A DNA stretch of 64,000 bases. Source: Macrostomum hystrix. Taxonomy: Eukaryota; Animalia; Platyhelminthes. Below the pieces are notes generated by a model that saw nothing but the letters and a program-made list of their open reading frames with translations, did no database searches and had not been told where the DNA came from. This document shows positions 37,010-63,016 of this stretch, in pieces. Positions within the stretch are counted from its first letter, which is position 1; the number at the start of each line of letters is the position of its first letter. The stretch covers positions 9,300,001 to 9,364,000 of the forward strand of contig CATNEN010000001.1 of assembly GCA_950097015.1 (NCBI GenBank), in the 5' to 3' direction. The translations under genes and the position numbers were made by a program.

Positions 37010-39829
37010 ATGAGAAACGAAATCAAGTACATTCTATTCACCATGTTGATGCTTACTACGTCACATCTGTGCGATGGAAGAAGTAAGTAAACTTGAGTAT
37101 GAAGCAGTGAGTATAAATATTTTACACGTAATAATGTTCTTGAAATCCTTCAGGTCCCTGTCTGGCGACTAGATATGTCAGGCACGATGGCCCTGCCATC
37201 AAACTGGACCCCACAGTCAGCAGTGATGTCATCAATGTTAGCAACTTAGTCAACTTAGTTCCAAGTTGTCTAATGCAGTGCCGACTCCACAGGTGTGCTA
37301 TAATTGTTGCTATGGAGATGAGCTCCTCCTGTCAACTTGTGATCGTGAGAAACGCCTCAGTGACTCCGGGACCTCCAGAGAGTCACGTGAGGCGACTTGT
37401 TGGCGCTGAGGTCGGAGCAAAGGTTTGGAAGGCCGAGAGCCTGGATGAAATGCTCAAATTTCGAGCAATCAACATTGCGCAAGGGTTTAAAAGTACGCAG
37501 CTTTAAAATCAAGCTTTGTATATTAGATTGAGACAATGTAGGAGTAATTATTGATCCACTTTCCATTACATGAATTTGTAGACAGCTCCACAGGAAGGCG
37601 AGGAGCAATTCGCAATGCTTTGATCAGTGTGACCGGCTGCTACCGTATTGACGTGGCCGGTGCCAAAGGTGGCAACTATCAGGCCACAAACTGGAACATA
37701 ATAGGTGGATTTGGCGCGCTCATCGCTGGAAGGTTCAATCTGACAGCTGGCAGCGAGCTGACAGCTGTCGTCGGACAAGCGGGTAGCACTTCTACCCCTC
37801 TGAGCTTTAAATACAGAAGGGTCAAAGATTGCGGCGGCAGCGGCGGCGGTGGCGGTGGAGGCAGCTTTGTGTACCGCACTGCGGACAAGTATCTGCTGAT
37901 TGCAGCTGGCGGTGGAGGGGGCGCATCTTGTTTGACCACAGGTAAAAAAGATATTTTGCCTGAGAATAAAAGTTCTTCATTCCGTAATGCGTGACAGCAG
38001 TCAAACAGTCTGTAGTAGCTCTTAAGGTCTCTCTGATTGAAGCAGTCGGTGTGTCTGTAGTCTCTCTGATTGAAGCAGTCGGTGTGTCTGTAGTCTCTCT
38101 GATTGAAGCAGTCGGTGTGTCTGTAGTCTCTCTGGTTGGAGCAGTCGGTGTGTCTGTAGTCTCTCTGATTGAAGCAGTCGGTGTGTCTGTAGTCTCTCTG
38201 ATTGAAGCAGTCGGTGTGTCTGTAGTCTCTCTGATTGAAGCAGTCGGTGTGTCTGTAGTCTCTCTGATTGAAGCAGTCGGTGTGTCTGTAGTCTCTCTGA
38301 TTGGAGCAGTCGGTGTGTCTGTAGTCTCTCTGGTTGGAGCAGTCGGTGTGTCTGTAGTCTCTCTGATTGAAGCAGTCGGTGTGTCTGTAGTCTCTCTGAT
38401 TGAAGCAGTCGGTGTGTCTGTAGTCTCTCTGATTGGAGCAGTCGGTGTGGCTGTAGTCTCTCTGATTGAAGCAGTCGGTGTGTCTGTAGTCTCTCTGATT
38501 GAAGCAGTCGGTGTGTCTGTAGTCTCTCTGATTGAAGCAGTCGGTGTGTCTGTAGTCTCCCTGATTGAAGCAGTCGGTGTGTCTGTAGTCTCTCTGATTG
38601 GAGCAGTCGGTGTGTCTGTAGTCTCTCTGGTTGGAGCAGTCGGTGTGTCTGTAGTCTCTCTGATTGAAGCAGTCGGTGTGTCTGTAGTCTCTCTGATTGG
38701 AGCAGTCGGTGTGTCTGTAGTCTCTCTGATTGAAGCAGTCGGTGTGTCTGTAGTCTCTCTGATTGAAGCAGTCGGTGTGTCTGTAGTCTCTCTGATTGGA
38801 GCAGTCGGTGTGTCTGTAGTCTCTCTGGTTGGAGCAGTCGGTGTGTCTGTAGTCTCTCTGATTGAAGCAGTCGGTGTGTCTGTAGTCTCTCTGATTGAAG
38901 CAGTCGGTGTGTCTGTAGTCTCTCTGATTGGAGCAGTCGGTGTGTCTGTAGTCTCTCTGATTGAAGCAGTCGGTGTGTCTGTAGTCTCTCTGATTGGAGC
39001 AGTCGGTGTGTCTGTAGTCTCTCTGGTTGGAGCAGTCGGTGTGTCTGTAGTCTCTCTGATTGAAGCAGTCGGTGTGTCTGTAGTCTCTCTGATTGGAGCA
39101 GTCGGTGTGTCTGTAGTCTCTCTGGTTGGAGCAGTCGGTGTGTCTGTAGTCTCTCTGATTGGAGCAGTCGGTGTGTCTGTAGTCTCTATGGTTGGGTCAG
39201 TCGGTGTGTCTGTAGTCTCTATGGTTGGGTCAGTCGGTGTGTCTGTAGTCTCTATGGTTGGGTCAGTCGGTGTGTCTGCAGCCTCTCCGATTGAGAAGTG
39301 TATAATGTCTACTAGTAGATAAAGTCTCTAATAAAATACAGGTCTCAATGGCACAGCCGGCGTCAACGGTAGTAATTCAATCGGCGGCAATGAAATCACC
39401 AAAGGATTTGGCGGCATAAATGGTCAGCCTGGTAAAAACGAGGCGACCAATTATAACCAAAACGCTGGCGGCTGCGGTGCCGGATGGCTTGGGAGGGCTG
39501 TCAATGCGCCGGATAATTCTTACCATGGCGAACGTGGTGGTGGCTTGAGCGAGGAGTGGTTGGGCGGCAACGCCGGAAGAGAAAGCCTTGGCGACGGTGG
39601 CTTCGGTGGTGGCGGCGGCGGAGCTTCTGGTGGCACTGGCGGTGCTGGCGGAGGCTTCAGCGGCGGCGGCGCTGGAGCTGACAGCGATCACGCTGGAGGC
39701 GGCGGTGGGTCTTTCTGCAATGGCGTTGGTTGCTCTGGTCAAGCTGGCGGAAACTGGAACAGCGAGCACGGCAGAGTCACGCTGCGACTGCTGGCTCCAT
39801 TTGCTGATAACTGCCTAGACACGGCCTAG
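37010..39829 (+). CDS. Secreted PAN/apple-like + ALK/LTK glycine-rich-domain protein, copy 1
   Basis: Exons 37010-37082 (signal peptide MRNEIKYILFTMLMLTTSHLCDG), 37154-37492 (CLMQCRLHRC..CQL), 37582-37941 and 39342-39829, all introns phase 1. YRIDVAGAKGG, FNLTAG..VVGQAG, GGGGGSFVY, LLIAAGGGGG, GAGW, GGFGGGGGG, GGGFSGG, GGSF and HGRV follow the ALK/LTK GRD motif order. Confidence 0.85.
38025..39290. repeat. 33-bp minisatellite (GATTGAAGCAGTCGGTGTGTCTGTAGTCTCTCT), intron 3 of copy 1
   Basis: About 38 copies; source of the spurious 443-aa ORF. Confidence 0.96.
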
Positions 39830-40890
39830 ATACTGCATAGATACTGCATAGATACTGCATAGATACTGCATAGATACTGCATGGATTCTGCATAGATACT
39901 GCATAGATACTGCATAGATTCTGCATAGATACTGCATAGATACTGCATAGATACTGCATAGATACTGCATGGATTCTGCATAGATACTGCATAGATACTG
40001 CATAGATTCTGCATAGATACTGCATAGATACTGCATAGATACTGCATAGATACTGCATGGATTCTGCATAGATACTGCATAGATACTGCATAGATACTGC
40101 ATAGATACTGCATAGATACTGCATAGATACTGCACGGATTCTGCATAGATACTGCATAGATACTGCATAGATACTGCATAGTTACTGCATGGATTCTGCA
40201 TAGATACTGCATAGATACTGCATAGATACTGCATAGTTACTGCATGGATTCTGCATAGATACTGCATAGATACTGCATAGATACTGCATAGATACTGCAT
40301 GGATTCTGCATAGATACTGCATAGATACTGCATAGATACTGCATAGATACTGCATGGATTCTGCATAGATACTGCATAGATACTGCATAGATTCTGCATA
40401 GATACTGCATAGATACTGCATAGATACTGCATAGTTACTGCATGGATTCTGCATAGATACTGCATAGATACTGCATAGATACTGCATAGATACTGCATAG
40501 ATTCTGCATAGATTCTACATAGATACGGCATAGATTCTGCATAGATTCTGCATAGATTCTGCATAGATACTGCATAGATACTGCATAGATACTGCATAGA
40601 TACTGCATAGATACTGCATAGATTCTGCATAGATTCTACATAGATACGGCATAGATTCTGCATAGATTCTGCATAGATACTGCATAGATTCTGCATAGAT
40701 TCTACATAGATACGGCATAGATTCTGCATAGATTCTGCATAGATTCTGCATAGATTCTGCATAGATACTGCATAGATACTGCATAGATACTGCATAGATA
40801 CTGCATAGATTCTGCATAGATTCTACATAGATACGGCATAGATTCTGCATAGATTCTGCATAGATTCTGCATAGATACTGCAAAGATTCT
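39810..40890. repeat. 11-bp tandem repeat (TAGATACTGCA) beginning in the last codons of copy 1
   Basis: About 96 copies with TAGATTCTGCA and TGGATTCTGCA variants. Confidence 0.96.
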
Positions 40891-41194
40891 GAACATTGAT
40901 TTACTACTTTAATGATTAAAAAAGTATGTGAACCAAAGAAGTCGCTGTCTTTTATCTAAAGAATCGAAATGTCGCAGCTTGATTGCCAGCCTACGATAAT
41001 ATTGTTTTCTAATTTATGCTCGCATATTTAGGTCCTAAAAAACTGTTTACGCAGTGATTTTTGTTCAGAAGTTGAGGTGAAACAGTAAAATATGATGTCC
41101 CTGAAAATATTCTCTGAAAAAAGCAAAATTATTTATGATGCTGATAAAAAAACCACAGCGAAATTCATTATCAGAGTTGCATTGCCCGTCAATT

Positions 41195-41320
41195 GCATGA
41201 CGAGCCCCGCAAGCCTTCTCTACGCGGCTACGCCTAAAACAAATGTGGCCTCGCCGAAGATTCGAGCTCAGGGACCTTCGCGCGAGTAGAAACGCTTTAG
41301 ACCGCTGTGCCACTGACCCT
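41195..41320 (-). mobile_element. SINE family B 5' fragment
   Basis: AAGCCTTCTC..CGCGGCT..ATGTGGCCTCGCC..TCGAGCTCAGGGACC..ACCGCTGTGCCACT. Confidence 0.75.
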
Positions 41321-42149
41321 CAACTATGGCTCTAAATATATGTACTCTTACGTTAACCGTTTTCTAGTGTTCAAATTTTTAGTCTATTGTCTCTGCTGTT
41401 TCTCATTTGGTTGCAACAGGAGAAAGCTGTCACACAGATCTGCAGGCGGCAAAAATGAGCAAAAAATGAGATGCGCGTTGAACAATAGCGACTACCAGTT
41501 TGGGTGGCAATACAGGTTCCACAATTCCAGCGGTATTTGGTCATATGTACAGCAGCATTATACTAGTAAGGGACTTGTAGCACACTAAAAGTGGGGAACG
41601 AACCTCGCGCTGGCAGACCGAGACCGGTTTCTGGCTTGTTTGCCTTCGTCAGTCAGCCATAGCCACACGCCATCCTCTCCCACCACTCTCAGTGTGCACA
41701 GAAGTCTCTTTTAAGCTTGCCATTTTTATGCCGCTATTTTTTAGTGTTATGTGAGAGTTTTGCAGCCAAGTCTTTGCTTTTCTACTGTTGTCAGTAGTCT
41801 GAATTGTATCTCTCTCAGGGCTGTTGTCACGAAGTGCAATTACCAGTATCCCATATTATTTGCCCGTGGCAATAGTCAATATTTTACATCCTTCTCTGAA
41901 TACCTTGTGGGCCCAATAATCTTCACAGGAGATTAGTTCAAACAACATCAAAGACAAAAAAAGCTTTTTGCCTTTGTAATCATAGTCAAAGGTGTATTTT
42001 TTGTTTTGTATCTCATGTTTTAGACAGGTCTTATTATAGTGTGTGCTGACAAGTCTCAAAGCTAGCTAGCAAAGCACTACTCCGATTGCAATAAGGCTCA
42101 TTGTCGTTTTGATTATTAATTCTTCAAACTAAAATAAAAACATTCATTG

Positions 42150-43896
42150 ATGTGGAAAATTATATTACTACTTACTGTCTGGATCCACCTGACAAGCCTC
42201 AGTGGTGCGCGTTCATTTTCTTATCGAAAAATGTACTTGTGGCTGTACATTTCCAAATGTACCATGGAAACTACCAGCAACTGTCAGCTCGGGATAGTTA
42301 GGGACGCTTCTGTCCTTCCGGGAACTCCGGGAAGTCACGTGTTTAGATTGGTCGGTTCTGAGGTCGGAGCCAAAGTGTGGAAGGTCGACAATATGAGTGA
42401 ACAGCTAAAGCTTCGTGGTTTCTACTTTCATTTGATTTTTTCAAGTAAGAGATAATTTTTACTTTCTTTGGTTTGCTCGATGACTCATCGCTACTTTTAT
42501 CTAACGGTTCTGTCTATGGCTTTGAGGGCAAGAATGATCTGAATACGAGTTCAGCAACGCCACAGGCGTCTATTGTCTCGTGAATTCAAGGGCGCCCACC
42601 TAGCATGAACCATAGACGAAGCTAGCGGGCTCAGAATGCATTCCTGCCCATAAAATCTCGGGACAACGATCATTGTTTCTAGTTTTTAAGCAAGCAACGA
42701 CTTCTAGCTTTGCGTCCTACCATAGACATCGGACTCTTGTTAAACGATTAATCCTTCTTTTGTGATTGCCAAATCGCAATTTTTCTGGATCCCATTTTCG
42801 TCTATGGACTATATATAGGTTACGACCGTAAAAATTCTAGCCAATTGAGCCAACCAAAAGTCAGCAGTGCCTGGCAACCGTTTTTTGCGAGCGCTGAAAA
42901 ACTGGACTTCGTTAAATTTCTTTGAAACTGCAACAGGACCTCTTCAATGGCGCTCTAATAAGTCTTTGTGATGCTCTGAGGCTGCTGACTATTTATTCAA
43001 TGCTTTAAATATGTTTTACAGACTTTACAACAGGCAAGAATGGGTCTATCCAGTTTGCTCGCATCAAAAAAACTGGCTGCTACCGCATAGAGGTAGCCGG
43101 TGCTAACGGCGGACAAAATCCCATCACTAGTGAGACTGGCGGTCGAGGAGCTCGAATATCTGGCCATTTCAACCTGACGGCTGGAACCCACCTGACAGTG
43201 ATTGTCGGGCAGGCTGGCGGCTGGGCAAATTCTAATATCAGTGGAGCTGGCGGAGGCGGAGGCAGCTTTGTCTACAGGACTGCGGACGACTTTCTACTGA
43301 TTGCGGCGGGCGGTGGTGGCGGCTCTTCACACAGTAGCGCGGGTCAGTCAGCGAGTATAACTTTGCGCCTGTACACCAATAAGATGATTTTTTTCTCTCG
43401 GCGCTTTCATTCTTAAGGTCGACCCGGTGAGATGGGCATCGACGGAAGCGACTCTACTGGTGGCCTAGCACGGAACACTGGCTTCGGCGGCAAGAGCGGA
43501 CAGCCGGGACAGAACGATGCGCGCCCTGGTGACAAGCAGGCCGCTGGCTGCGGTACTAGATGGCTGGGCAAGGCCGCAAACGAAAGAGGCAACGCTAATC
43601 AAGGTGAGGAAGGCGTCGGTCTTGTCGACGGCTGGGTCGGTGGCAGCGCCGGCGATGGAAGCACTGGCAACGGCGGCTTCGGTGGTGGCGGCGGCGGAGC
43701 CTCATCGGGCACTGGCGGCGCTGGCGGAGGCTTCAGCGGTGGCGGCGGGGGAACCGGTTCCAATCATGCTGGAGGCGGCGGTGGTTCCTTCTGCCGGGGC
43801 AGCGGCTGCACATCAATCACTGGAGGCAACTCAGGCGGTGAGCACGGTCAAGTGGCCGTGAGGTTTCTCGTTCCGTTTGCTGACAGCTGCGTATGA
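42150..43896 (+). CDS. Secreted ALK/LTK-GRD protein, copy 2, with partly deleted PAN domain
   Basis: Signal peptide MWKIILLLTVWIHLTSLSG reads in frame into METTSNCQL..GAKVWKV (to 42444). Exons 43022-43342 and 43418-43896 are intact. Confidence 0.7.
42510..42830. mobile_element. Non-coding element related to the flank of the tyrosine-recombinase remnant, in an intron of copy 2
   Basis: TTCAAGGGCGCC..AGCATGA.CCA.AGACGAA..TAGCGGGC.C.GAATGCATTCCTGCCC is shared with 56727-56800. GTCTATGG and CCATAGAC motifs recur. Confidence 0.6.
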
Positions 43897-43959
43897 AGAA
43901 CTGAAAAATCAGAATTTATTAACAAACAAAAAAATGTATGAATAATAGTTTTAAAAGGA

Positions 43960-44185
43960 GGACTGTGAGCAACTGAACATCGTTGGGTGACACTAGATCC
44001 CCAGCGAGCGGGGGGCAATTCTGCCCATTCCACTGACTCCTCAGCACACACGCACGCATGTGTGTACATCTTCCTAGATCTATGCCCTTAAAAGCCAACC
44101 ATCAAGACAAGCAAGCCATCTCTACGCGGCTGCGCTCCAAATAAATCTACCTCGCCACGGATTCGAGCTCAGGGACCTCTCAGTT
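43960..44185 (-). mobile_element. SINE family B, degenerate copy
   Basis: GGCAATTCTGCCCATT..CTGACTCCT..TCGAGCTCAGGGACC. Confidence 0.75.
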
Positions 44186-44575
44186 AAAAGTTCATAGCAC
44201 GTGCATAAAATGTTTCTTTAGCTTAAACTGATCGTTAACTGTCTCTTCTATAATTAAAAAGTTGCACGATTTCAAATTCGTAGACTTAAATCGCTTACTG
44301 AGCTCACACGATGCTTTATCACTGAAAGCCTGTAATATGCCCGTATTCCTATGATAAAAAGTGAAACCCATTTTGTTTGTCATTTCCGCCATTAAATCTA
44401 GATTGTCTATAATTCCGATCGATTTTAGTGTCGGTGTTGGTGTTGACAGAGACGCTATAGCAAGTTTCTTCACTTAAAACCTTTTAAATACAGTGACTTA
44501 TTACTGGCATTTCTAGTTTTGCTCCCAGAACAGATATTACTCCAACATTAACTACAACCATTGCCCAAAGTCGCG

Positions 44576-46881
44576 ATGCATAGAGCCTCAAAGGGCCTAA
44601 CATTTCTGGTGTCGATGCTTGCAATCAGCAACATCTCGGCTACTTCGGGTGAGTGATGAAAGATTTTAACTTATTGAGAACTTGTTCTGAAAAATATGTA
44701 CAGGTTGATGAGAAATTTGTGCGTGCATTCTAGATTTATGTCAGAGCGTTAGATACGTCTGTCACCAAGGCCCTGCCATCGAGCTGGAGCCCACTGTTAG
44801 CAGTGATGTCATCAATATCAGCTCTGACGCCTCTGTACTCAGCTGTCTCATACTGTGTCGCCTTCGCCAATGCGCTGTGGCTGTTGTCATAGAGACGAAG
44901 AGTCTCTGCCAACTCGTTATCGTCAGGAACTCATCCACGGCGCTAGGACCTCCAGCAAGTCACATTAGAAGAATCGTCGAGTCGGGTAAAGGATCGAATG
45001 TTTGGAAGGTGAAAGACCTGAGTGAACTTCTGAAGTGCCGAGCTTTCAGAGTGGTTCTTTCGTTTAACAGTAAGAAATCACCTCCGAGTCTATTTTTGAA
45101 TCAATTAAGACAGTTATATTAACTAACATATATTACATATTATCTTGCAGATGTTTCTACTGGCATGTCTGGATCAATCCAGTCTGCATTCATCAACTTT
45201 ACTGGCTGTTACCGAATCAGAATCTCTGGTGCCAGTGGCGGAGACAACACTTGGGCCAACACGAGCGGAGGCTTCGGTGCTTTCGCAGCTGCCCTGTTCA
45301 ACCTGACTGCTGGCTCAGTGCTGTCTGTTGTCGTCGGTCAAGGCGGCGGATCAGCTGGTTCAAATTCGAGCGGAGCCGGTGGCGGCGGCGGCAGTTTCGT
45401 GTGGAATTCTGCCGGACAACTGCTGATCGCAGCGGGCGGAGGCGGAGGCGCCTCGCGTACCAACAATGGTGAGCTCGTGATCGCCTACTTCAAGATTTAT
45501 TGCGACAAAGCATTAATAATATTATCTGCAGGAGGGCTGCGTGCCATGGCACACCATTCGGTGGCACTATAGACTCGCAGCCAGCGAAGAAGAAATTCTG
45601 CATATTTTGCTGACTCCTGAGCACACACTCACACAGTTGTGTTCATCTGCCCTGACGTTCTCATCGTCTGACAGTGTTCTGTGCCTTGGAGGTTGGCCCA
45701 CAAGGGGCGTTTATAGAACAATAACCACCAAAGCCTTCTCTCCGCGGCTGCACCCAAAATACAAGCAATGCGGCCTCACCGCGGAATCGCTCATATACCT
45801 TGGTGCGAAAGGCGAACGCATTAACCGATCTGCCACTCGCCCCATTGCGCCAATTTTACTTAATATTGTAATATATAATATAATATTAATAAGGCTAACT
45901 TTAATTAATACTGTGCAGCCTCGTCCCGTTTCAGAGTCTCAAAGTTCAGACCTCCCTATCCGGTTCTCCAGCCGCTAATCCGCACCTCTATGATTGGTTG
46001 AGGCCCCTCGCCCTTTCGCGACTCTGCGTTGCCTTTCCCTACCCACCCTCAGCCCTGAACTTGCCCCCGATCCACATTCGTCACAACCCAGTTCTGCGTG
46101 GCCGGGTCGGCGCCTGATTGGTCAGCCTAGACCCGCAGTCAGCCTCACCCCACCTTTCTCTCTGCCCCGGCGCCCACCCTCCCCCGATTCGTGCCATCCT
46201 CTCATGGGGCGGCGTTTCAATTCTGTTTACGGGATCCTTGTCAATTATTTCCCCTACACACAATAGAGCACACACCTGCATTATTTGTATTGAATGTATC
46301 AAATGTGTGCTAATCAAATTCTCTATAGTTCAACTGAATTTCGAATCGAATCACTTTAGCCATCCCCTGTCACCGGTTTAACAGGTGAGCCCGGCCAAAC
46401 TGGTTCCAATGGGACCGATTCTTCTGGGGGTAACCCTGATTACAGCGGTATTGGTGGCACCAACGGACAACCTGGAGCTAGCTATTGCCATTCATCAGCC
46501 AATCATCAGGCTGGTGGAAGCGGAGCTGGCTGGCTAGGCACGCCCGTGAAGGCAAAGTCGAACTCAGCACAGGGCGACAGAGGCGGTGGACTGACTGAAA
46601 ATTGGGTTGGCGGCGTCGCTGGGAACGGAAGCATTGGCCACGGCGGCTTCGGCGGAGGAGGCGGCGGGGCATCCTCCGGCGCAGGCGGCGCAGGCGGCGG
46701 CTTCAGTGGTGGCGGAGCTGGTTGCGGAAAAAGGCACGCTGGTGGCGGCGGAGGTTCCTTCTGTGGCGGTAGCGGCTGTTTACACGTCAACGAAGGCTTC
46801 CGCGAGGGCAAACACGGTCAGGTGGTACTGCAGCTGATGGCGCCTTTTGTCAATAGCTGTGAGGATGTTGTCACAGATTAA
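44576..46881 (+). CDS. Secreted PAN-like + ALK/LTK-GRD protein, copy 3
   Basis: Exons 44576-44648 (MHRASKGLTFLVSMLAISNISATS), 44734-45070, 45151-45468 and 46385-46881. Phase-1 introns and an open frame. Confidence 0.8.
45530..45845 (-). mobile_element. SINE family B, near full-length, intron 3 of copy 3
   Basis: Collinear with 26140-26456. Confidence 0.8.
45919..46383 (+). mobile_element. LTR-like insertion (5'-truncated solo LTR?) at the exon 4 acceptor of copy 3
   Basis: C-rich segment absent from the paralogues, ending in ..TTTAACA directly before exon 4. Confidence 0.45.
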
Positions 46882-47304
46882 TCAAAAAAATTACGGCACT
46901 ACAGAACTAGACATTTCAAAGAGCTTTAAAAAATGGTCATTGGCTTTACAATGGATGTATTGTCAACCTCTTAAAACTGTTGCTGCATCGTTCTAAATTA
47001 TTTTTGTTTCCTATTTTTCAAACTAGTCTACTTGTACAGGGAATAATAATCTGTCCTTATTCATCGTAAAGTAATAGGAACTTAATTATGCTCTACTGCA
47101 CTGAACTCTGGACTGATTCACGTAAAAGAGTCTGACGCAACATCTACATGATCTAACATGACTTCATGGCACGTATTGCACTTCTGCTTTCAAACGAATA
47201 AACGCTAAACTAATGCTAAAGTTAAACGCCATTAGCGAAAGTGCAAATTTTGGAAAACAGGGGGTTTTTTATTAGGATCAAATAAGAAGAATAATAATTT
47301 CAGG

Positions 47305-47540
47305 AGAGTTGCGGGCTATGGCACGTTATTTGGTGACACTAGACCCGCAGCCAGCGAGGAGGCAATTCTGCCCATTTCACTGACTCCTGAGCACACACGC
47401 ACACAAATACCGTACGCAGGCATACGCTCACACAGGTGTGTACATCTGCCCTGACTTTCTCATTGTCAGGCAGGTACATTTCGCGGCTGTGTCCCGTATG
47501 AATTAAACAAATGAGGCAAACACGTTAACTGCTCTGCCAC
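47305..47540 (-). mobile_element. SINE family B, internally deleted copy
   Basis: TTTGGTGACACTAGACCCGCAGCCAGCGAGGAGGCAATTCTGCCC..GTGTACATCTGCCCTGAC..GCTCTGCCAC. Confidence 0.8.
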
Positions 47541-48041
47541 CGATCAGTTCAACCAAGATGTAGAGAATAAATGAAAAAGCGGTCAATGACACGCTGTATA
47601 TTTACTTTTTTCTTTTTTAATCTAGAAGCTAAGCTGTACGGTTCAGTCCATAAAAATACTAGAGATATTCCTCGTATATTTCAGAACCGCATTTGAAGTG
47701 AGGCGTGAAGTGAGACCTTCTTGAAACTGTCAGAAATTGTCAGTGTCTGACAATAGATAACAGCTCTTAGCTAGCTCATATCAATGAGTTGATTGTCTTC
47801 CCGGAGAGGAGTTATAAAGAAGTCCTTCAATTATTCATTAAGATGCAGAAACAAGGACTGTTAGCAAACAGTCAGTCCAATCATGCCAAAGAGGCTAATA
47901 TTGAACTGAAGAGGCTAGCTATTTCATAGCAGCATCGATTTCATTCAATGAACTGCAACGAAGAGAAGAGCATAAATTAAGATACTGTATCGTGGATTTT
48001 CAAATTCGCCCCTGAAATTTCGTTCTAAAAACGTTGAAATT

Positions 48042-49489
48042 ATGATGGTAATCGTATTTTGCACAACGTTACTGCTACTGAAGCTAACGATTTGTTTAAG
48101 TACAATCGAAGCCGTTGGTAAGTTTTACAGCATTCTTTAAAGAAAGAGTTACTCAAATCTATCAGTTTAAAAATTATTTCAGAGCCCTGCCGCATCCGGT
48201 ACACCAGTCATGCAGGACCAGCCATCGAGCTGCAGCCCACAGTTAGTAGTCACGTCATGAATTTCAGCACGGTCACCACCGTGCCTGGCTGTCTCATTCT
48301 GTGCCGCTTTCACCGATGCGCCGTGGCTGTAGTCACAAGGGCACGCAGTCTGTGTCAGCTCGTCGTGTTGAATGACGCCGCAGCCACTCCGGGACCTCCA
48401 GGAAGTCACGTGAGGCGGATAATCGGCTCGGAAGTCGGAGCGAGCGTCTGGAAGCTGGACAACCTTAGCGAGTTACTGGAGTATTATTCGTTCAACAAGA
48501 CCTGGTTGTTTAGCAGTAAGCGAATGTTCTTGAAGGTAAACCATTTTGTAAACGCAAAAGTGTCTAACACTCCGTTCGACTAAATAAAATCTCTACTGCA
48601 GACACTTCCACCGGCAGGAACGGATCTTTCCAGTACTTGACGATCAGCACGCCTGGCTGTTACCGCATCCAAGTCGCTGGAGCGAAAGGTGGAGACAATT
48701 TAGCCGTAGAAAAGTTTGGCGGCCGTGGTGCTTCGGTAGCTAGCAGCTTCAGGCTAGCAACTGGCACCGAGCTCACCATTGTGGTCGGTCAGGCGGGTGG
48801 GCATGGCATTTCAAACTCCTCCTTAACTGGCGGGGGTGGCGGCGGCGGCGGCGGCGGCGGCAGCTTCGTGTATCGAACTGCCAATAAATCCCTTCTGATG
48901 GCTGCCGCTGGTGGTGGGGGAGCCTCATTTTTTAATAATGGTGAGCCAATTGGTTTTCAGAGTAATAGCAATGCATTCGCTAGAACCGTTAAATGTTTCA
49001 TTTCCACTGCATATGGCAGCTAATCCCGGCGAGGGTGGAGTCAACGGAAGCAATTCAGCTTTTGGCGCCGAAAGCAACAGAGGCTTCGGTGGAGTCAACG
49101 GACAACCCGGAAGCAATGATGCGAGAAATAATGCGGGAGGCTGCGGTGCAGGCTGGCTGGGCAAACCCGTTCGACCAAGGAGCAACACGCAGCAGGGCGA
49201 CAGAGGCGGCAGTCTGGCCGACGGTTGGGTCGGCGGCAGCGCTGGAGATGGCAACACTGGCGACGGTGGCTTCGGAGGGGGCGGCGGCGGAGCTTCAGCT
49301 GGCACTGGCGGAGGCGGCGGCGGCTTCAGCGGAGGTGGCGCCGGAGTTGGACGCCAACACGCTGGAGGCGGCGGCGGCTCATTCTGCGGCGGCAGCACCT
49401 GCACGGCCGCTTCTGGTGGCAACCCAGATGGAGAGCAAGGTCGAGTTTCTCTGCGGCTGCTCGCTCCGTACGCAGTCAGCTGTCCGTGA
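48042..49489 (+). CDS. Secreted PAN-like + ALK/LTK-GRD protein, copy 4 (compact introns)
   Basis: Exons 48042-48117 (MMVIVFCTTLLLLKLTICLSTIEA), 48183-48515, 48602-48940 and 49020-49489. Phase-1 introns and an open frame. Confidence 0.85.
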
Positions 49490-49789
49490 CGTTAGTCGTG
49501 ACAGTTTTTTTAACGCATTCCTCTTGCAGGAATTGCTTTATTTCTACAAATTGAGAGGACTTAGACAGCACTGACTTGGTGAAAAGTGAAAACTGGACGA
49601 TAAAAATCGTGCAGTCATATCATTGCAGTCATATCATTGCACAACCTGTCGGCATACGATCATTTCATTTATTTTATTCTACAGTACGAGCTAATCTTTT
49701 CCAGTTGTGATTGTTTCATAAGAAATATTGTAATATTTCTAAGAAGTAATGGGTGCAGGAAACTCTGCTCATTTCGCTGAATCATGATG

Positions 49790-53847: not shown

Positions 53848-56249
53848 TCAAATTAGCAGCATCTCAATCTCTTGCATGGAATAGTAGTAACCGTAGAAGT
53901 AGTTCCACATGATGCCCATAGCGTAAGGTCCATTTATAGCTTCAGAGAAGGTCTTGTAGGGTCCGTTCGGATGCGCATCGAAGCAGTTGCCGAACCACCA
54001 GGCTCCATTGTATTTTATGGCGCAGTTCTCAGGATCTATGTCGTTGTCAGCGTCCAGTGTCGAAAACATTTGTCCATTGCTTCTCGAGCTAAGCGAATCA
54101 CCGACACCAGGACTGGCTGAAAAGCCGGAAACATTGAGCCTGTACTTGTCAGCCTCAGCACCCACGGAGAAACGGAAGTAGTCGGCCCAGCTCTCTGCGT
54201 TGCTCCACAGCTTCATCAGGAACCTCAGCTTCCGGCTACCAGATGATGTAATCTCATGTAGAGCGTTTAGTCCTAATTGTTTTTAGGAACAAGTTAGTTA
54301 TTAAATGACAAGTGAAGCAGCAACAACCGACTTGAAATACTAACGAATTAACATCTTAAAGTTTCGAACTCGCAACCTATCCAATAGTTTTTATCCGGTC
54401 CCTCGCCAAACTCGCTGAGGTATTGCGTCCAGTTGCGGTAGAAACTGACCGAACCGGATACCCTATGCTGCACAGTGATCCAGCATTCATCGTTGGTTGC
54501 CTGAAAGTTTAGAAATTAAATATTGTTTTTAGATTTCGGGCAAATTTCCTTATCATCTAGACTCATCTACACTTACCCAAACCAGTTGACTACCTCGATT
54601 CACATTGCGACATTTCCGGCAGTGGCTAAGGCCCAAGCGACATCGGTAGTGAGTGCAAATGCCGGAGCTAGTGTTGAAGGCTACCAACTGCAGGCTTGGG
54701 TCCTGCATAGCAGAAGAGATGCATTGCATCAAAGAACCAGAGGTCAGTCAGAGGTCAGGATTCTGCAGCAGCTTGGCATCATCGAGCCTGTGGAGGGTCC
54801 TGTGAGCAACGCTTCTCCGGTCGTCTGGATCAAGAAGAAGGACGGGACGTTGCGCATGTGCGCCGATTACAAGGTCCATGTGAACGACAAAATAAAGCCA
54901 GAGTCATACCCTATTCCAAGCATCGAGCACCTCTTTGGCAAGTTAAAGAATGCCAAGAAGTTTGCCAAGATTGATCTGAGGTCGGCTTACTGGCAGATCG
55001 AGCTGGACGAATCCGCCCAAGGCATCTCTATCATCAATACCTCGCGAGGCCTATACCGTGTCAAACGCCTTCAGATGGGCATGAAAAACGCTTCATTCAT
55101 TTTTCAACGCACAATGGAGAGCATCCTCTCCGACTTGAAGGGACTACTGATCTATCAAGACGACATCATGGTCTATGCTGAGAACGTTGAAGCACTCCAG
55201 AAGCGTCTGAAAGCAGTCAAAACGCGCCTGGCCGAAAAAAAGGTAACGGTCAATGAAGACAAATGTACAGGCATTTGCGATTCGATTTCATTCCTTGGAT
55301 TCGAAATTTCTGCCGCTGGAATTCGGCCCGATGATAAGCTCGTGGACAAAGTTCGCCACATCTCGACACCGAAGACCAAGAAGGAGATCGAGCAATTTCT
55401 CGGTCTGGTGAATTTCTTCGGCCGCTTGATTCCTGACTATTCCGCCAAGGTCGCCCCATTGAACGAACTGCGCAAGGCATCCACGCCGTTTGTCTGGTCT
55501 GAAGCATGTGCTCGCGCTTTCGAGAATCTCAAGAAGGAGATCTCATCACGACCAATAGTACAACCGTACAGCCTGGAGAAGGAGGTGACCCTCACAACAG
55601 ATGCCTCTAAAGGAGCGTTGGCAGGCGTTGTTACCCAGGAAGGACGCCCTGTAATCTTTATCTCTAGGACACTGTCCAAGGCCGAGACTAACTATTCCAA
55701 CATTGAACGGGAAGCACTCGCCATCTTCTGGGCCGTCTGTCGCCTGAAACACTACCTCCAAGGCCGACGATTTACGGTACAGACGGATCATCAGCCTCTT
55801 CTACGGCTTTTCGGTGGCAGCATACCAATGAGTTCATCGGCAAGAATCAGTCGCTGGGCCCTTTACCTGATGCAATTTGACTTTAGCGTGGTCTACGTTC
55901 CCGGATCGCGCATTCCGCATGCCGATGCGCTTTCTCGTCTGCCGTTTGATAATGACAGTCAAGACCCGGCCGACGCATTCGAGGCAATCAACTCAGTTGC
56001 CTTTGAATCCCCTACTATCAATCCTCGACGGATCGCTAGCGAACTTGATTCTGATCCACTGCTACAGCGCATCATACGTCGCGTACGCAATGGCGACTGG
56101 CATAACTGCACAACACTCGCCACCTCATAGTCTGAGAGATTCTCTCGACTAGGCCCCCACAGCTGCACGCTTGACGCGGCTTTAGATGTTGGATGCTTGG
56201 TTACAGCCAGCAAAAGCAGAACAAGTCGCAGAGTGTTGGTTAAATTCAT
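53848..56249 (-). pseudogene. Secreted PAN-like + fibrinogen C-terminal (FReD/ficolin-like) gene, disrupted in exon 1
   Basis: Exon 1a 56249-~56108 (MNLTNTLRLVLLLLAV..VASVVQ), exon 1b ~54664-54577 (GICTHYRCRLGLSHCRKC..LVW), exon 2 54500-54377 ([25 protein letters not shown]), exon 3 54272-53848 (LNALHEIT..FSTLDADND..CA..GAWWFGNC..NG.Y..GIMW..EML). Confidence 0.8.
54665..56107 (+). mobile_element. Ty3/Gypsy LTR-retrotransposon pol fragment (RT + RNase H; no gag, protease, integrase or LTRs seen)
   Basis: SPVVWIKKKDGTLRMCADY, KIDLRSAYWQI, MGMKNAS..FQR, YQDD, FLGLVNFF, TDAS, NYSNIEREALAI, TDHQPL, ADALSR. Confidence 0.93.
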
Positions 56250-58278: not shown

Positions 58279-58799
58279 TCGAAGCCATGACTATTCCCGC
58301 AACCAAATAAATAAAGTGAACACTAAAATAAAGATCTGAAAAATTTACAGGTTCAGGAGGAGGCAGTTTTTATTAAAAATATATCTAGAAAATTCAGAAT
58401 AACTAACTAATCAGGAGACTGTCTTTCTTTCATCTTCTATCTTTCAAGCTGATTGTCAACTATTGTTCCGAAAAATTCATCTACACTACTGCAGCAATAA
58501 TCTACATAAATGACAGAATGTCATTCAATTTACTGATCTTGTAGGGGGCATAATGATTAGAGAATAGCAAGTCAAGGCTTGCTTCAAGATTAAATACATT
58601 CCGGCTGTCAATAAACGCGACAAAAAAGAATTGTCTTTTAAATGATTGAAAGCCAAACGTAAAGTTAAGTGTTGTCTTGTAGTTTGTAAGAATTTGAGTT
58701 CTATTTAGAAAGCTTTTTCTATCATTTCTTTTGGTTTGTTTCGCAATATTGCAGACGCAGTTCTTGTTTTTTATACCAATATGATTGTTTTTCTAAGAA

Positions 58800-59110
58800 T
58801 CTAGCTCTTCTAATCTTCACTGATGAGCCAGATACAATCAATGCGAGTGTAAGCAGTGAAATAATTAGCAAGGCGAGCACACCTACTGAGATCATGTGAG
58901 CTCACCAGTGCCTTAGACTTGACTGCCTTCTAGCGCCATGGATGCCATCAACGCGAGCTTGCCAGCTTCTGCTGGTGAGGGCCGCGTAAGCAGAACTCGG
59001 ACTGCCAGAACGCCATGTCAGAAGGGTCCTGGGCACTGAACCCGGAGCTAGGATCTGGAAAGTCTCAAAATTCAGCGAACGCGTCAAGCGTCGTGCGATT
59101 AATGATATGC
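58800..59110 (+). pseudogene. Decayed PAN-like exon of the GRD family (copy 5)
   Basis: ..VSSEII..EIM*AHQCLRLDC..RACQLLLVRAA*AELGLPERHVRRVLGTEPGARIWKV is homologous to exon 2 with two in-frame stops; no GRD exons follow. Confidence 0.75.
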
Positions 59111-59149
59111 TTAGGCTAACGAATTTGCGTCTCACAGAAAGGTTCTTCT

Positions 59150-59458
59150 TGAGCTCGATTCCACGGCGAGGCCACATGCATTTGGGCCGCAGCCGCAGAC
59201 AGAAAGCTTAGGGGCATGTGCAATTTACGCCCTTAAGGGCCAACCTCCAAGGCAAAATGAGAGTGTACACTGCCTGACGATGAGAAAGTAAGGGCAGATG
59301 TACACACCTGTGTGAGCGTATGCCTGCGTACGGTATTTGTGTGCGTGTGTGCTCAGGAGTCAGTGAAATGGGCAGAATTGCCTCCTCGCTGGCTGCGGGT
59401 CTAGTGTCACCAAATGATGTACCATTGCCTGCAGCCCTCCTGTAATTATTATTAATAT
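59150..59458 (+). mobile_element. SINE family B copy
   Basis: GAGCTCGATTCC through ..CAGCCCTCCTGTAATTATTATT. Confidence 0.85.
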
Positions 59459-60346
59459 ATTTCCGCGGGGGGTTTGGGCGCGGAGGTTAAGCCCAAAGGA
59501 GGACGGGCCGGATCGACCCTTGTGTCCTAGCAGCAAAAATGGAGAGCTGCCGGACTCCCTCTGCCTGGATCCACGCATGTCACGAACCTCTAAACCGATC
59601 GACCTCTGCAATAGAAGTACGATAAAGGGGGCTTCGAGTAAGAACCACATTGCCGACCGAAATAAACCGTCCGACAATGGAGGGTCCTTGGGCATACCGT
59701 CCTTCCACTGGGAAGGTGACCCAGTATGCGGTTTTAACCGCCGGAAATAAAGGTATTTACTAGGCGTCGTCCAGTAGGACACCACCTCGGCTTTATACTT
59801 GGAGTTGCCTAATTAATGAACAATTAATTGTGAAGTACCTGCAGGTTTCCATCAAGTAATCAATTTGTGAAGTTCGAAAAAATGAAGAAACGTCTCTAGC
59901 AGATTGGTTTACCCAGCTTCCTATGGTATAGTATGCAGGAATCGATTTATTGACCACAACAGTCTCAGAAACCACTCAGGTACCACCATTGTGACTACTA
60001 CAGTTTCATAGTTCCCTGCAGCATTGATTACTTTACAGAACAGAACAGAACTGCGACTCAAGACAGATGTCAAATAGACTCTCGTCGTGTTGCGAAGACA
60101 CGATGTCTACACGCATGAATGCAACTGGGGGGAGAATCGTAAGTTAAGACTTTCGTTTTTATCGATTAAATGCTTCTTTTCGTTTGTCCACAACAGAAAA
60201 TGTAATGTCTCTGAATCAACAAAATGGTTAGCAAGCTGCGTGACTTGAGTCAAATATTACCTGTGAGAAGAAAATCTTTGACCAATCTCTTATTCTAAGG
60301 TATATAAACAAGATGAATTGCAGCATAGAATCGTCAATGGACCATC

Positions 60347-63016
60347 ATGAAGCTAAACTCAATTGAAATTTTATTCCTAATCGGACTCATCTCCGGTCTC
60401 GCTTGGGTCACTGTGGATGCCCAGGATGGTAAGCCGGTCATTGTGAGACTATTATTTTATCTCGTGGACCATGCTCAAGGAGTTGCAGTGCGGACTAACT
60501 TGTTAGACTCGCGCACCAAGGTCCCTGAGCTCGATTCCGTGGTGAGGCCACATTCCTTCGGGGCGCAGCCGCGGAGAGAAGGCTTTGGCGGGGGCTTGTT
60601 CTGCAGTTGGGCACAGTGGAAGACACTGCGTGACGATTGATACTAACAATAATAATTGAAGGAGGACAGCGGGCAATGAATGGCACATCATCGAGTGACA
60701 GTACACCCGCAGTCAGCGAGGAGGCAATGCTCTAGAGTATGACTCTTGAGCACACACGCACAGATACTGGAGGCAGGCATACACTCACTCAGCAGTGTAC
60801 ATCTGCCCTGACTTTTTCATCGTCTGGCAGTCTACACTGTCACTGTGCATTGAGTAGAAGGCGTAAATTGCATGACAAGCCACCGAGCCTTTTCTCCGCG
60901 GCTAGCAGATACTGTCACCAAATGATGTGCGTGTGCCCAAAGCCCTCGTGCAAAAAATAAATAATCTAATTATTATTATAGAAAATATCTTAGCAAATAC
61001 AAGCGTTTTATTTACTATTAACACGTTTTAATCCTTCCGCTTCAGCCCTTTGTCCTTTGATGCGTCTAGACAAGGCGCGCCACTTTGTCGAGTCCACTGC
61101 ACCAGTGATTGTGAATAACAATATTAAATCTGACGTCGTCAATGAGACCAACGTGCTGACCATTGTCGAATGCTTGGCCCTGTGCCAGACAAGATTCTGC
61201 GCTGCGATAGTTTTCATCTTGAGCAGTCGAATCTGTCGCATCGTGGTATTATTTGACACTCTGCTGACCGCCAGCCCGCCTGGAAGCCACATGCGGAGAG
61301 TTCTGGGCAATGAGTCTGGCGCCAAAGTGTGGGTTGTTAGGGACTTCTCAATGCTACTGGATGCTTGCCCGGGCCTCATATTCTCAAGTGAGTTCTCAAC
61401 TGCCATTAAAATTAATTACATGAGCTTATAGTTAGAGCGTAGGACTCATAAGATTCAACTGGAACTACTTGTGTCCTTTAGCACGACACATAACTCGACA
61501 TCGCTTCAGTCGACCCAGCTGTAAACTTAAGTTCGATTATTTCAGTCAGCGGCAACACCAGCTTCGGTATTGTCGGAGATACATCCATCAACGTGACTGG
61601 CTGCTATCGTATCGAAGCTTCCGGTGCAAGAGGCGGAAACAACAGCTTCGCGAACAAATTCGGCGGCAGAGGCGCCTACGTCGGTGCGAACTTCAATCTG
61701 ACATCGGGCACTAAGCTGTTTATCGTTGTTGGACAGACTGGTGGCCCGGCCAGCTTGGCAAAGTCTGGAGCAGCTGGCGGCGGTGGTGGCAGTTTCGTCT
61801 ACGTTGGAGCCAGCAATCTACTGATGGCGGCCGGCGGCGGAGGCGGAGCTTCAAACGAGTCCGATGGTGACGTCTAGACGCTTGTTAAAATTGCACTTCT
61901 CAAAAACGCTGCGTCAAGAGAACTTCTCTGCAATTTAACCGCTTCGTTCTGGGGTTGAGCGGTCTAACGCGTTTGCCTTTCGCACCAAGGTCCCTGAGCT
62001 CGATTCCGCGGCGAGGCCACATTCATGTGGGGCGCGACTTCGGAGAGAAGGCTTGGGGCCTTTCGCGCAATTTACGCCCTAGAGGTCCACTTTGAACACT
62101 TTGTATACACTGCTTGAGGATAAAAATTTAAAACTGCCGATTCTAAAAATCCTTTTTTTTCTTAGATTTTTTCCTGTCGAATATTACCATTTTAACCGTC
62201 AACTCTTAGAGTAGCAGCTTGGGGGTGAGTGGCAGAGCGGTTAACGATTCCGCGGTGAGGCCACATTAAATTTAGGCGCCCTTAAGAACCAACCTCCAAG
62301 GCACAGTGAGAGTGTACACTGGCTGACGATGATAAAGTAAGGGCAGATGTACAAACTTGTGTGTGTGTGCCTGCGTACGGTATCTGTGTGCGTGTGTGCT
62401 CAGGAGTCAGCGGAATGGGCAGAATTGCCTACTCGCTGGCTGCGGGTCAAGTGGCACCAAATGACGTGTGATTGTCTACGGCCCTCCTGTACAATTAATT
62501 TTTATTATTAACCGATTCGGTCCAGGTGCCCCGGGCCAGGCTGGAGTGAACGGAACTGACTCGACTGGTGCGATGGACTCGAACCGCGGCTACGGTGGCA
62601 GCAACGGCATGGCCGGCTTGAACAATCCGAACTCCACCCAGGTCGGTAGTAGTCACGGCGGCTGCGGGGCTGGCTGGCTGGGCAAGGCCTTAAATGCGAG
62701 GCGAAGCTCGAATGACGGCGAGAGAGGCGGCGGTCTGGCCGACAATTGGCTCGGTGGCGTCGCCGGCGAAGGCGGTATTGGCGATGGCGGCTTCGGCGGC
62801 GGCGGCGGTGGTGGCAGCGGGACAACGACCCAGTTTGGAGCAGCCGGAGCCGGCGGCGGCTACAGCGGAGGAGGCGCGGGGTTGAGTTTCAACCACGCCG
62901 GCGGCGGTGGCGGTTCGTTCTGCGGCGGCGGCGGCTGCATTGCGAGTACCGGTGGAAACGTCGATAGCGACCAAGGCCTTGTGTTCTTTCGCCTGTTGGC
63001 TCCATCTAGCTGCTAG
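60347..63016 (+). CDS. Secreted PAN-like + ALK/LTK-GRD protein, copy 6
   Basis: TATATAAA at 60301. Exons 60347-60428 (MKLNSIEILFLIGLISGLAWVTVDA), 61046-61387, 61546-61867 and 62526-63016, phase-1 introns. Confidence 0.85.
60505..60930. mobile_element. Two SINE family B fragments in opposite orientation, intron 1 of copy 6
   Basis: Plus copy ~60505-60620; minus copy ~60700-60905. Confidence 0.75.
61950..62500 (+). mobile_element. Two tandem SINE family B copies, intron 3 of copy 6
   Basis: Heads at ~61950 and 62221 (GGGGGTGAGTGGCAGAGCGGTTAAC). Confidence 0.82.

What the first reader, a model, noticed from the sequence alone, without database searches (positions are those of the whole stretch)
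37010..63016. Tandem family of secreted, kinase-less ALK/LTK glycine-rich-domain proteins with an N-terminal PAN-like module
Seen: five open 3-4-exon genes and one remnant, all on the plus strand. Each has a signal peptide, a CxxxCxxxxC..C domain and a Gly-rich domain that ends at the stop codon, with no TM helix or kinase. Known: this motif order matches the ligand-binding glycine-rich domain of the ALK/LTK receptors, a beta-sandwich fused to a polyglycine-II helix bundle. Inference: a lineage-expanded family of soluble GRD proteins acting as ligand decoys, mucus/adhesive components or recognition molecules. I do not know of a functional description of this architecture.
Basis: partly seen in the sequence, partly recalled or inferred. 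Interest (0 to 1): 0.85.

Follow-up and report, generated by a model that had tools for sequence, protein, structure and literature searches.

The report
Secreted kinase-less ALK-type glycine-rich genes
A flatworm gene cluster holds five intact genes and one wreck for secreted proteins that join a small PAN/apple head to the ligand-binding module of the ALK/LTK receptors, with no membrane anchor or kinase. It is one more locus of a family of over 100 genes that sits in databases but has no described function.

Summary
Window 37010-63016 (+) carries five complete genes of 364-419 aa, with 3-4 exons and only GT-AG, phase-1 introns, plus one dead head exon.

- **Build.** Each protein has an N-terminal hydrophobic leader and a PAN/apple-fold head with four invariant Cys, cut short in one gene. 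The full ALK/LTK TNF-like plus glycine-rich module follows, and the protein ends where ALK's EGF-like domain would begin.
- **Fold evidence.** A close M. lignano homologue modelled onto LTK/ALK gives Z 29, rmsd about 2 Å and 32-36% identity.
- **No receptor parts.** There is no TM segment. The nearest tyrosine-kinase domain on this contig is about 570 kb away.
- **Selection.** The copies are old (synonymous sites saturated) and under purifying selection (pN about 0.3, pS 0.5-0.75).
- **Family size.** The genome holds at least 109 GRD and at least 135 head exons.
- **No ALK found.** I found no ALK-like receptor gene, and a published table lists ALK as absent from schistosome kinomes, so a decoy role is unlikely.
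- **Not lineage-restricted.** Stony corals have head-first PAN-GRD proteins, and choanoflagellates and bacteria carry GRDs on surface proteins.
- **Most likely role (inferred).** Soluble extracellular binding or recognition proteins.

Expression could not be tested because no RNA run was listed. This scan had already met the family on other DNA of this genome (s1-846605, s1-332718, s1-344297, s1-339213).

The parts
37010..39829 (+). Gene g1, 419 aa. Exons 37010-37082 (leader), 37154-37492 (PAN-like head), 37582-37941 (GRD first half), 39342-39829 (GRD second half plus stop).
   Evidence: Complete ORF with GT-AG phase-1 introns of 71, 89 and 1400 nt. PF12810 scores 42.7 bits on exon 3. Intron 3 holds a 33-bp minisatellite.
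42150..43896 (+). Gene g2, 364 aa. Exons 42150-42444 (leader fused in frame to the second half of the head only), 43022-43342 (GRD first half), 43418-43896 (GRD second half plus stop).
   Evidence: Complete ORF. tblastn finds only head residues from about 57 onward. It lacks most of the invariant Cys motif, so it is open but head-truncated.
44576..46881 (+). Gene g3, 407 aa. Exons 44576-44648, 44734-45069, 45151-45468, 46385-46881.
   Evidence: Complete ORF with GT-AG phase-1 introns of 85, 81 and 916 nt. PF12810 scores 28.8 bits on exon 3.
48042..49489 (+). Gene g4, 405 aa. Exons 48042-48117, 48183-48515, 48602-48940, 49020-49489.
   Evidence: Complete ORF with introns of 65, 86 and 79 nt. 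PF12810 scores 43.3 bits. The head, folded alone, gives pLDDT 87 and a PAN/apple fold.
58828..59112 (+). Remnant: a head exon with two in-frame stops. No GRD exons follow it, and a dispersed repeat abuts it at 59156-59462.
   Evidence: tblastn with the g3, g4 and g6 heads gives 28-32% identity with stops. It is also listed with 1 TGA and 1 TAA.
60347..63016 (+). Gene g6, 411 aa. Exons 60347-60428, 61046-61387, 61546-61866, 62526-63016. It is the most divergent copy.
   Evidence: Complete ORF with introns of 617, 158 and 659 nt. PF12810 scores 40 bits. PAN_1 E 0.009, below the cut-off.

Best explanation
**What it is (shown).** These are real protein-coding genes of a large Macrostomum family. 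Each encodes a small secreted, probably N-glycosylated protein made of two parts:
- a PAN/apple-fold head;
- the complete TNF-like plus polyglycine-II ('TG') module that forms the ligand-binding region of ALK/LTK receptors.

The protein stops right after that module. It has no EGF-like domain, membrane anchor or kinase, so it cannot signal by itself.

**What it does (inferred).** The proteins most likely act outside the cell as soluble binding proteins.
- The rigid TG module would be the main binding face.
- The head would offer a second, conserved site (invariant His, Arg and Trp next to the disulfide core) for a glycan or a common partner.
- The many old, diverged but conserved paralogues would give a repertoire of specificities for recognition or bridging.
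For: **Gene models**
- All five are complete, with canonical phase-1 introns.
- Exon junction residues and the C-terminal end align without gaps to independently predicted M. lignano and coral proteins.

**Selection**
- pN is 0.23-0.39 against pS 0.50-0.75 in head and GRD alike.
- Nucleotide similarity between copies is confined to exons.

**GRD identity**
- Pfam PF12810 passes its cut-off.
- The family profile hits ALK, LTK and SCD-2 chains at E 1e-13 to 1e-10.
- The model of homologue P0151 (pLDDT 78) superposes on LTK/ALK TG at Z 29, rmsd 1.9-2.4 Å, 221-232 residues and 32-36% identity. It covers ALK 678-986 and ends there.

**Head**
- The g4 head model has pLDDT 87.
- Its best hits are nearly all PAN/apple modules: HGF N domain and plasminogen Z 6.5, then MANEC, FXI, MIC4 and SML-2.
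- 14 of 29 heads hit PAN_1 below threshold.
- The nearest Atlas clusters are PAN proteins.
- Invariant residues are C36, C40, C45, C57, H75, R78 and W89.

**Other**
- 5-10 N-x-S/T sequons per protein and no second hydrophobic segment.
- No kinase domain in the window; the nearest on the contig is about 570 kb away.
- Related GRDs sit on bacterial surface proteins and phage fibre tips, which are binding structures.
Against: - No expression evidence.
- Secretion rests on hydrophobic leaders, not on a signal-peptide predictor.
- No ligand is known or predicted for either module in any invertebrate stand-alone GRD protein.
- The binding role is inferred only from what the two folds do elsewhere.
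- g2 lacks half its head and may be decaying.
- The fold evidence for the GRD comes from a 43-49% identical M. lignano homologue.
Confidence: 0.6

Rival explanations
1. Structural or material role. The proteins would be bulk components of a secreted matrix, such as mucus, rhabdite or adhesive-gland secretion, or eggshell. The polyglycine-II block would give a stiff building unit and the PAN head would cross-link.
For: - About 21-25% Gly, many N-glycosylation sequons and a secretory leader.
- A large copy number could serve dosage.
- PAN domains occur in apical matrix proteins (general knowledge).
- An earlier scan note reports a family member with a mucin-like stalk (s1-339213; not checked here).
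Against: - The copies are 45-56% identical and old, which fits diversified specificity better than dosage.
- The Gly-rich part is a compact globular domain, not a fibre-forming repeat.
- The window copies have no low-complexity stalk.
Confidence: 0.2
2. Ligand decoys. Soluble copies of the ALK ligand-binding region would trap an ALK ligand and damp receptor signalling.
For: The module is the complete ALK/LTK ligand-binding TG region by fold. Soluble ectodomain decoys exist for other receptor families (general knowledge).
Against: - None of the 109 GRD exon hits lies beside a tyrosine-kinase domain in one gene. The only near pair (C38:10.78 Mb) is a family member followed by an ING-like gene and a separate ACK-like kinase gene.
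- ALK is listed as absent from schistosome kinomes (PMC4669435).
- ALKAL ligands are vertebrate-only (PMC10605310).
- More than 100 diverged decoys for one pathway is implausible.
- The EGF-like domain needed for ALK activation geometry is missing.
Confidence: 0.07
3. A decaying, silent array. The genes would be unexpressed relics of an old expansion.
For: - One dead head exon and one head-truncated gene in the window.
- Earlier notes report many broken copies in other clusters (s1-846605, s1-344297).
- No RNA evidence was obtained.
Against: - Four complete and one open gene remain despite saturated synonymous divergence.
- pN is well below pS in all domains.
- All 14 splice sites are canonical.
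- Most genome-wide exon hits have no internal stop.
Confidence: 0.08
4. Exons of a longer receptor gene. The stop codons would be skipped by splicing on to TM and kinase exons elsewhere.
For: None beyond the resemblance to the ALK ectodomain.
Against: - Each last exon runs to the final beta-strand of the TG fold and then a stop.
- The M. lignano and coral proteins end at the same place.
- The next gene starts 1-3 kb downstream, and there is no kinase hit within about 570 kb.
Confidence: 0.03

Closest known systems
Ligand-binding TG region (TNF-like plus glycine-rich subdomains) of the ALK and LTK receptor tyrosine kinases (PDB 7NX0, 7NX1, 7N00, 7LS0, 7MZY; C. elegans SCD-2, 7LIR)
   Same: - Same fold and module limits: Z 28-29, rmsd about 2 Å, about 225 residues, 32-36% identity, covering ALK 678-986.
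- SCD-2 gives Z 20.9.
- Profile-to-sequence E 1e-13.
- Pfam PF12810 passes its cut-off.
   Different: - No EGF-like domain, TM helix or kinase, and no MAM or LDLa domains.
- A PAN/apple head in front.
- More than 100 copies instead of one or two.
- Soluble.
Cnidarian PAN-GRD and EGF-GRD predicted proteins (Stylophora pistillata AWC38_SpisGene21703, Porites harrisoni ABFA07_017308, Pocillopora 'lysozyme-like', Nematostella and Acropora 'loricrin-like')
   Same: - Leader, N-terminal PAN, then GRD, with the protein ending just after the last GRD strand.
- 36-40% identity to the window genes.
- The residue at the head/GRD junction (Asn of an N-x-T sequon) is conserved.
- The GRD starts at or near a phase-1-compatible exon boundary.
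   Different: - Corals have an extra Cys-containing segment of about 60-80 residues, or EGF domains, between PAN and GRD.
- Their PAN passes Pfam's cut-off.
- Their whole GRD is one exon.
- Head-to-head homology is not demonstrable (hhalign E 0.18).
- Equally uncharacterised.
Macrostomum lignano UniProt predictions (A0A1I8HRN4 'Apple domain-containing protein', A0A1I8GEH1, A0A1I8GL89 'receptor protein-tyrosine kinase')
   Same: Same family and architecture, 43-62% identical.
   Different: A different species. The entries are unreviewed, machine-named, often truncated or fused to neighbouring genes (for example P0001, 2348 aa). None is closer to the window genes than the window genes are to each other.
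Stand-alone GRDs on bacterial and choanoflagellate surface proteins, and polyglycine-rich phage fibre tips (Monosiga XP_001748072; T9SS-sorted Bacteroidota proteins; Bxb1 tail tip 9D93; cyanophage Pam3 fibre 7YPX)
   Same: A GRD module used without a kinase on extracellular or surface binding proteins. 40-48% identity over the first GRD half for the cellular proteins.
   Different: Other partner domains and often several GRDs per chain. The phage proteins match only at Z 8-9.
PAN/apple modules (HGF N domain 3HMS, plasminogen, factor XI apple, HAI-1 MANEC, Toxoplasma MIC4, Sarcocystis SML-2)
   Same: Same fold for the head (Z 4-6.5, 66-93 aligned residues) and the same C-x3-C-x4-5-C...C core.
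   Different: Sequence is below Pfam's cut-off. The family has its own G-P-x-x-S-H-V-x-R...V-W motif and a C-terminal helix.

Membership tests
ALK/LTK receptor tyrosine kinases | Extracellular TNF-like plus glycine-rich (TG) ligand-binding module | tested here: met
   PF12810 passes its cut-off. PDB profile E 1e-13. Z 29 to LTK/ALK TG for the homologue model.
ALK/LTK receptor tyrosine kinases | Membrane-proximal EGF-like domain after the TG module | tested here: not met
   The structural alignment ends at ALK residue 986. The proteins stop 3-12 residues after the last strand.
ALK/LTK receptor tyrosine kinases | Single transmembrane helix | tested here: not met
   No hydrophobic 19-mer lies beyond the leader, apart from a buried head strand. 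DeepTMHMM was not available.
ALK/LTK receptor tyrosine kinases | Intracellular tyrosine-kinase domain | tested here: not met
   No PF07714 hit in the window; the nearest on the contig is about 570 kb away. No RTK catalytic motif in any of 374 fetched relatives.
Pfam PF12810 ALK_LTK_GRD domain family | HMM score over the gathering cut-off (24.5 bits) | tested here: met
   The first GRD exon scores 42.7 bits in g1, 28.8 in g3, 43.3 in g4 and 40.0 in g6. Only a partial piece of g2's exon was tested, and it gave nothing. The second-half exons alone do not score.
PAN/apple domain (Pfam PF00024 and clan) | HMM score over the gathering cut-off (21.4 bits) | tested here: not met
   The best window score is 16.2 bits (g6). 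14 of 29 genome heads match at E<=0.1, best 5.9e-4.
PAN/apple domain (Pfam PF00024 and clan) | PAN fold: a central helix packed on a beta-sheet, pinned by a conserved disulfide core | tested here: met
   The g4 head model has pLDDT 87. The top VIA and Foldseek hits are nearly all PAN/apple modules, Z up to 6.5. Four Cys are invariant.
Cnidarian PAN-GRD proteins | Same domain order and same protein end, with demonstrable homology over both domains | tested here: inconclusive
   The order, the end and GRD homology are met. Head homology is not significant (hhalign E 0.18). Corals carry an extra linker module.

The most novel reading that the evidence does not exclude
Soluble PAN-TG proteins would be an ancient eumetazoan family, shared by cnidarians and flatworms, built from a mobile phase-1 GRD exon module.

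Macrostomum, in a genome where I found no ALK-type receptor gene, would have expanded this family into a long-lived extracellular recognition repertoire of over 100 genes, for example for microbes or mating partners.

On this reading, ALK's ligand-binding region is one receptor-tethered offshoot of a much wider family of soluble binders.
Probability: 0.2. Interest if true: 0.65.

Novelty: new variant of a known kind. Interest (0 to 1): 0.45.

Why it matters
- The TNF-like plus polyglycine-II module has been studied only as the ligand-binding region of the ALK/LTK cancer receptors.
- Here it appears as a free, secreted, greatly multiplied protein, in a genome where I found no ALK-type receptor gene and in a phylum whose schistosomes are reported to lack ALK.
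- Look-alike proteins occur in corals. The module therefore has a kinase-independent job that nobody has described.
- I know Macrostomum as a laboratory model that supports RNAi, in situ hybridisation and transgenesis (my own knowledge, not checked here). That would make the job testable, and it bears on where the ALK ectodomain came from.
- As a finding of this scan it is not new: the family was already met on other stretches of this genome.

Tried and rejected
- **Expression.** The look-up of sequencing runs (RNA) on 44000-49600 listed no run. Expression and splice junctions stay unverified by reads.
- **True ALK gene.** I looked for a GRD exon near a kinase domain. The only pair, at C38:10.78-10.80 Mb, is an ordinary family member ending in a stop, then an ING-like gene, then a separate ACK-like kinase with an SH3 domain. 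Rejected.
- **Intronless paralogues.** Paralogues with long ORFs at C1:4.93 Mb looked like intronless copies usable as a full-length reference. They are copies whose short introns happen to stay open in frame. Rejected.
- **Longer relatives.** A search with region 186-560 of P0001 gave only fused M. lignano models and bacterial multi-GRD proteins. No ALK sequence came back, so no tree including ALK could be built.
- **Head homology.** hhalign of flatworm heads against coral PAN-GRD proteins was not significant. The head profile against PDB sequences gave nothing.
- **Literature.** Searches for Macrostomum with glycine-rich, ALK, PAN, PF12810 or ALK_LTK_GRD found nothing relevant.
- **Joined models.** The spliced models were searched exon by exon, by reference. 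The joined proteins were built only inside scripts, for ORF checks, alignment and pN/pS. They were not sent to any search, folding or complex tool.


Full report
**Setting.** The window is G000:C1:9300001-9364000 of a 220-Mb, 42-contig assembly. Earlier notes of this scan call it a Macrostomum-type flatworm. My searches agree: every close database relative is from Macrostomum lignano, at only 43-62% identity. Upstream, on the minus strand, lie ordinary genes (ATG101, NAT10, EXOC6/Sec15). The finding occupies the last 27 kb.

**Observation.** Stop-to-stop frames on the plus strand show five sets of three homologous coding blocks, plus one isolated broken block. Splice sites were placed from three things: conservation among the copies, canonical dinucleotides and phase. 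Assembled inside a script, all five models are complete ORFs with GT-AG introns, and every intron is in phase 1.

| Gene | Span | Exons | Length |
|---|---|---|---|
| g1 | 37010-39829 | 4 | 419 aa |
| g2 | 42150-43896 | 3 | 364 aa |
| g3 | 44576-46881 | 4 | 407 aa |
| g4 | 48042-49489 | 4 | 405 aa |
| g6 | 60347-63016 | 4 | 411 aa |

- The donors after the head exon are all A|GT(A/G)xG.
- The junction codon gives Asn in four genes, and that Asn starts an N-x-S/T sequon.
- The same junction residues and the same protein end are seen in independently predicted M. lignano and coral proteins, with no gaps at the junctions.
- The remnant (58828-59112) is a head exon with two stops and nothing behind it.
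- g2 is open, but its leader is fused to the second half of the head, so it lacks most of the Cys motif.
- Each protein has a hydrophobic leader, 7-13 Cys, 21-25% Gly and 5-10 N-glycosylation sequons. None has a second TM-like segment.

The joined models were never sent to a search or folding tool. Searches were done exon by exon, by reference.

**What the Gly-rich part is.**
- Pfam ALK_LTK_GRD passes its cut-off on the first GRD exon of g1, g3, g4 and g6.
- A 75-row family alignment hits human ALK, LTK and nematode SCD-2 chains at E 1e-13 to 1e-10, and hits nothing else in the PDB.
- The M. lignano homologue P0151, 43-49% identical to the window genes, was modelled with that alignment (pLDDT 78, pTM 0.70).
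- Its top Foldseek hits are all ALK/LTK (E 6e-12).
- With VIA-align it superposes on the LTK and ALK TG region at Z 28-29, rmsd 1.9-2.4 Å over 221-232 residues, with 32-36% identity. The match covers ALK 678-986.
- SCD-2 scores Z 20.9. The next class, phage tail-tip and fibre proteins, scores only Z 8-9.

The proteins thus hold the whole TNF-like plus polyglycine-II module. They end where ALK's EGF-like domain begins.

**What the head is.**
- An alignment of 29 heads from this genome has invariant C36, C40, C45, C57, H75, R78 and W89.
- Sequence evidence for PAN is only sub-threshold: 14 of 29 heads at E<=0.1, with the window best at 16.2 bits against a cut-off of 21.4.
- The g4 head folds confidently (pLDDT 87).
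- Its best structural matches are almost all PAN/apple modules. HGF N domain and plasminogen give Z 6.5, followed by HAI-1 MANEC, leech antiplatelet protein, SML-2, factor XI/kallikrein apple, Eimeria PAN and MIC4.
- The protein-atlas neighbours are PAN-domain clusters.

I accept a PAN/apple fold. I do not file the head as a Pfam PAN_1 member.

**No receptor parts.**
- No PF07714 hit lies in the window, and the nearest on the contig is about 570 kb away.
- Across the genome, none of the 109 GRD exon hits sits next to a kinase domain in one gene.
- The single suspicious pair (C38:10.78 Mb) is a family member with its own stop, then an ING-like gene, then a separate ACK-like kinase.
- A published table lists TK/ALK among the families absent from the Schistosoma haematobium and S. 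mansoni kinomes (PMC4669435).
- The known ALK ligands are vertebrate-only ALKALs, or the LDLa proteins Jeb and HEN-1 (PMC10605310).

All this makes the decoy idea weak. Absence of ALK from this genome is not proven, because only the best kinase candidates were scored.

**Family size and age.**
- The genome has at least 109 GRD-exon hits and at least 135 head-exon hits, mostly without stops.
- 71 of the 109 GRD hits lie on contig C1, and another copy starts just past the window end.
- Within the window the copies are 45-56% identical in protein.
- pS is 0.50-0.75, near saturation, while pN is 0.23-0.39 in the head and in both GRD halves.
- DNA similarity between copies is confined to exons.

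These are old duplicates kept by purifying selection, not a recent burst and not a pseudogene field. Birth and death still go on, as the remnant and g2 show.

**Distribution.**
- The first GRD exon finds 1474 cluster representatives at E<=1e-3.
- They include M. lignano entries machine-named 'Apple domain-containing protein' or 'receptor protein-tyrosine kinase'.
- Stony-coral proteins of about 450 aa have PAN_1 (over the cut-off) in front of the GRD. Cnidarians also have EGF-GRD proteins.
- Monosiga brevicollis has a protein with five GRDs.
- Many bacterial surface proteins carry GRDs.
- In 24 metagenome contigs that encode close relatives (70-83% identity) of the Stylophora coral protein, most matches run in one uninterrupted segment from about residue 163 to the C-terminus. 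In the seven contigs I inspected, an AG compatible with a phase-1 acceptor lies one to five codons before the conserved F-T-T motif, near the flatworm head/GRD intron.
- Head-to-head homology between flatworm and coral is not shown.

The architecture is therefore not unique to Macrostomum. Whether it is inherited or was assembled twice by exon shuffling remains open.

**How it most likely works.**
- *Shown:* intact genes for two-module proteins, each with a leader and without TM or kinase, under selection.
- *Inferred:* they are secreted and act as soluble binding proteins. Both folds are binding modules wherever they have been studied: TG binds cytokines in ALK/LTK, related polyglycine domains tip phage fibres, and PAN/apple binds proteins or glycans.
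- The invariant His/Arg/Trp patch on an otherwise fast-diverging head suggests a common head ligand. The many old paralogues suggest a spread of specificities.
- A matrix or adhesive role is the main rival.

**Novelty.** No paper in the searchable library describes the family. The sequences are, however, in public databases, and this scan had already reported the family from other stretches of this genome, including the coral parallel (s1-846605, s1-332718, s1-344297, s1-339213). My copy counts and the coral result agree with those notes. This locus adds:
- five well-defined models;
- the selection test;
- the genome-wide GRD-versus-kinase check;
- the link to a published table listing ALK as absent from schistosome kinomes (PMC4669435).

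I rate it a new variant of a known kind, of moderate interest.

Noticed in passing
window 38027-39294: A 33-bp minisatellite of 38 copies at 96% match fills intron 3 of g1. It reads as a long false ORF in one frame.
   Followed up: no
window 39810-40891: An 11-bp unit (ACTGCATAGAT) is repeated about 98 times. The array starts 17 nt before the g1 stop codon, so the last codons and the stop of g1 lie in its first units.
   Followed up: partly
window 26119-26459, 35389-35547, 45512-45846, 47280-47478, 59156-59462, 60634-60903, 62268-62514: A dispersed repeat of about 160-350 bp occurs in both orientations at 67-94% identity. It sits in introns of g3 and g6, upstream of g4, and right behind the dead head exon. 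It is probably a SINE- or MITE-like element.
   Followed up: no
window 53848-54216 (-) and 54523-56130 (+): Between g4 and the remnant lie a fibrinogen C-terminal domain exon on the minus strand (PF00147, E 2e-24) and an LTR-retrotransposon pol fragment with RVT_1 and RNase H.
   Followed up: partly
window 1-30000: The upstream minus-strand genes (ATG101, NAT10, EXOC6/Sec15) are interleaved with many 1-2-kb minisatellite arrays. Examples are 1-1651, 8732-10244, 11371-12449, 14094-16065, 18564-20227, 22306-23036 and 27013-29255.
   Followed up: no
G000:C1:9365211-9365468 (about 1.2 kb past the window end): Another GRD first-half exon on the plus strand, so the array continues beyond the window. 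Further clusters lie at C1:9.13-9.15, 9.44-9.45, 9.50 and 9.58 Mb.
   Followed up: no
L001-L003 (G000:C38:10779492-10782104): A family member gave the best PF12810 hit in the genome. It lies 11-13 kb upstream of an ACK-like kinase gene on the same strand, with an ING-like gene between them. It mimics a GRD-plus-kinase receptor but is not one.
   Followed up: yes
L009:919-2010 (-), L012:1015-1953 (-): Two paralogues at C1:4.93 Mb have a short head/GRD intron that stays open in frame. This produces ORFs of over 300 aa that look intronless.
   Followed up: partly
L035-L058 (metagenome contigs): Close relatives (70-83% identity) of the Stylophora coral PAN-GRD protein match mostly from about query residue 163 to the C-terminus in one segment. 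In the seven contigs inspected, an AG compatible with a phase-1 acceptor lies just before the F-T-T motif.
   Followed up: partly
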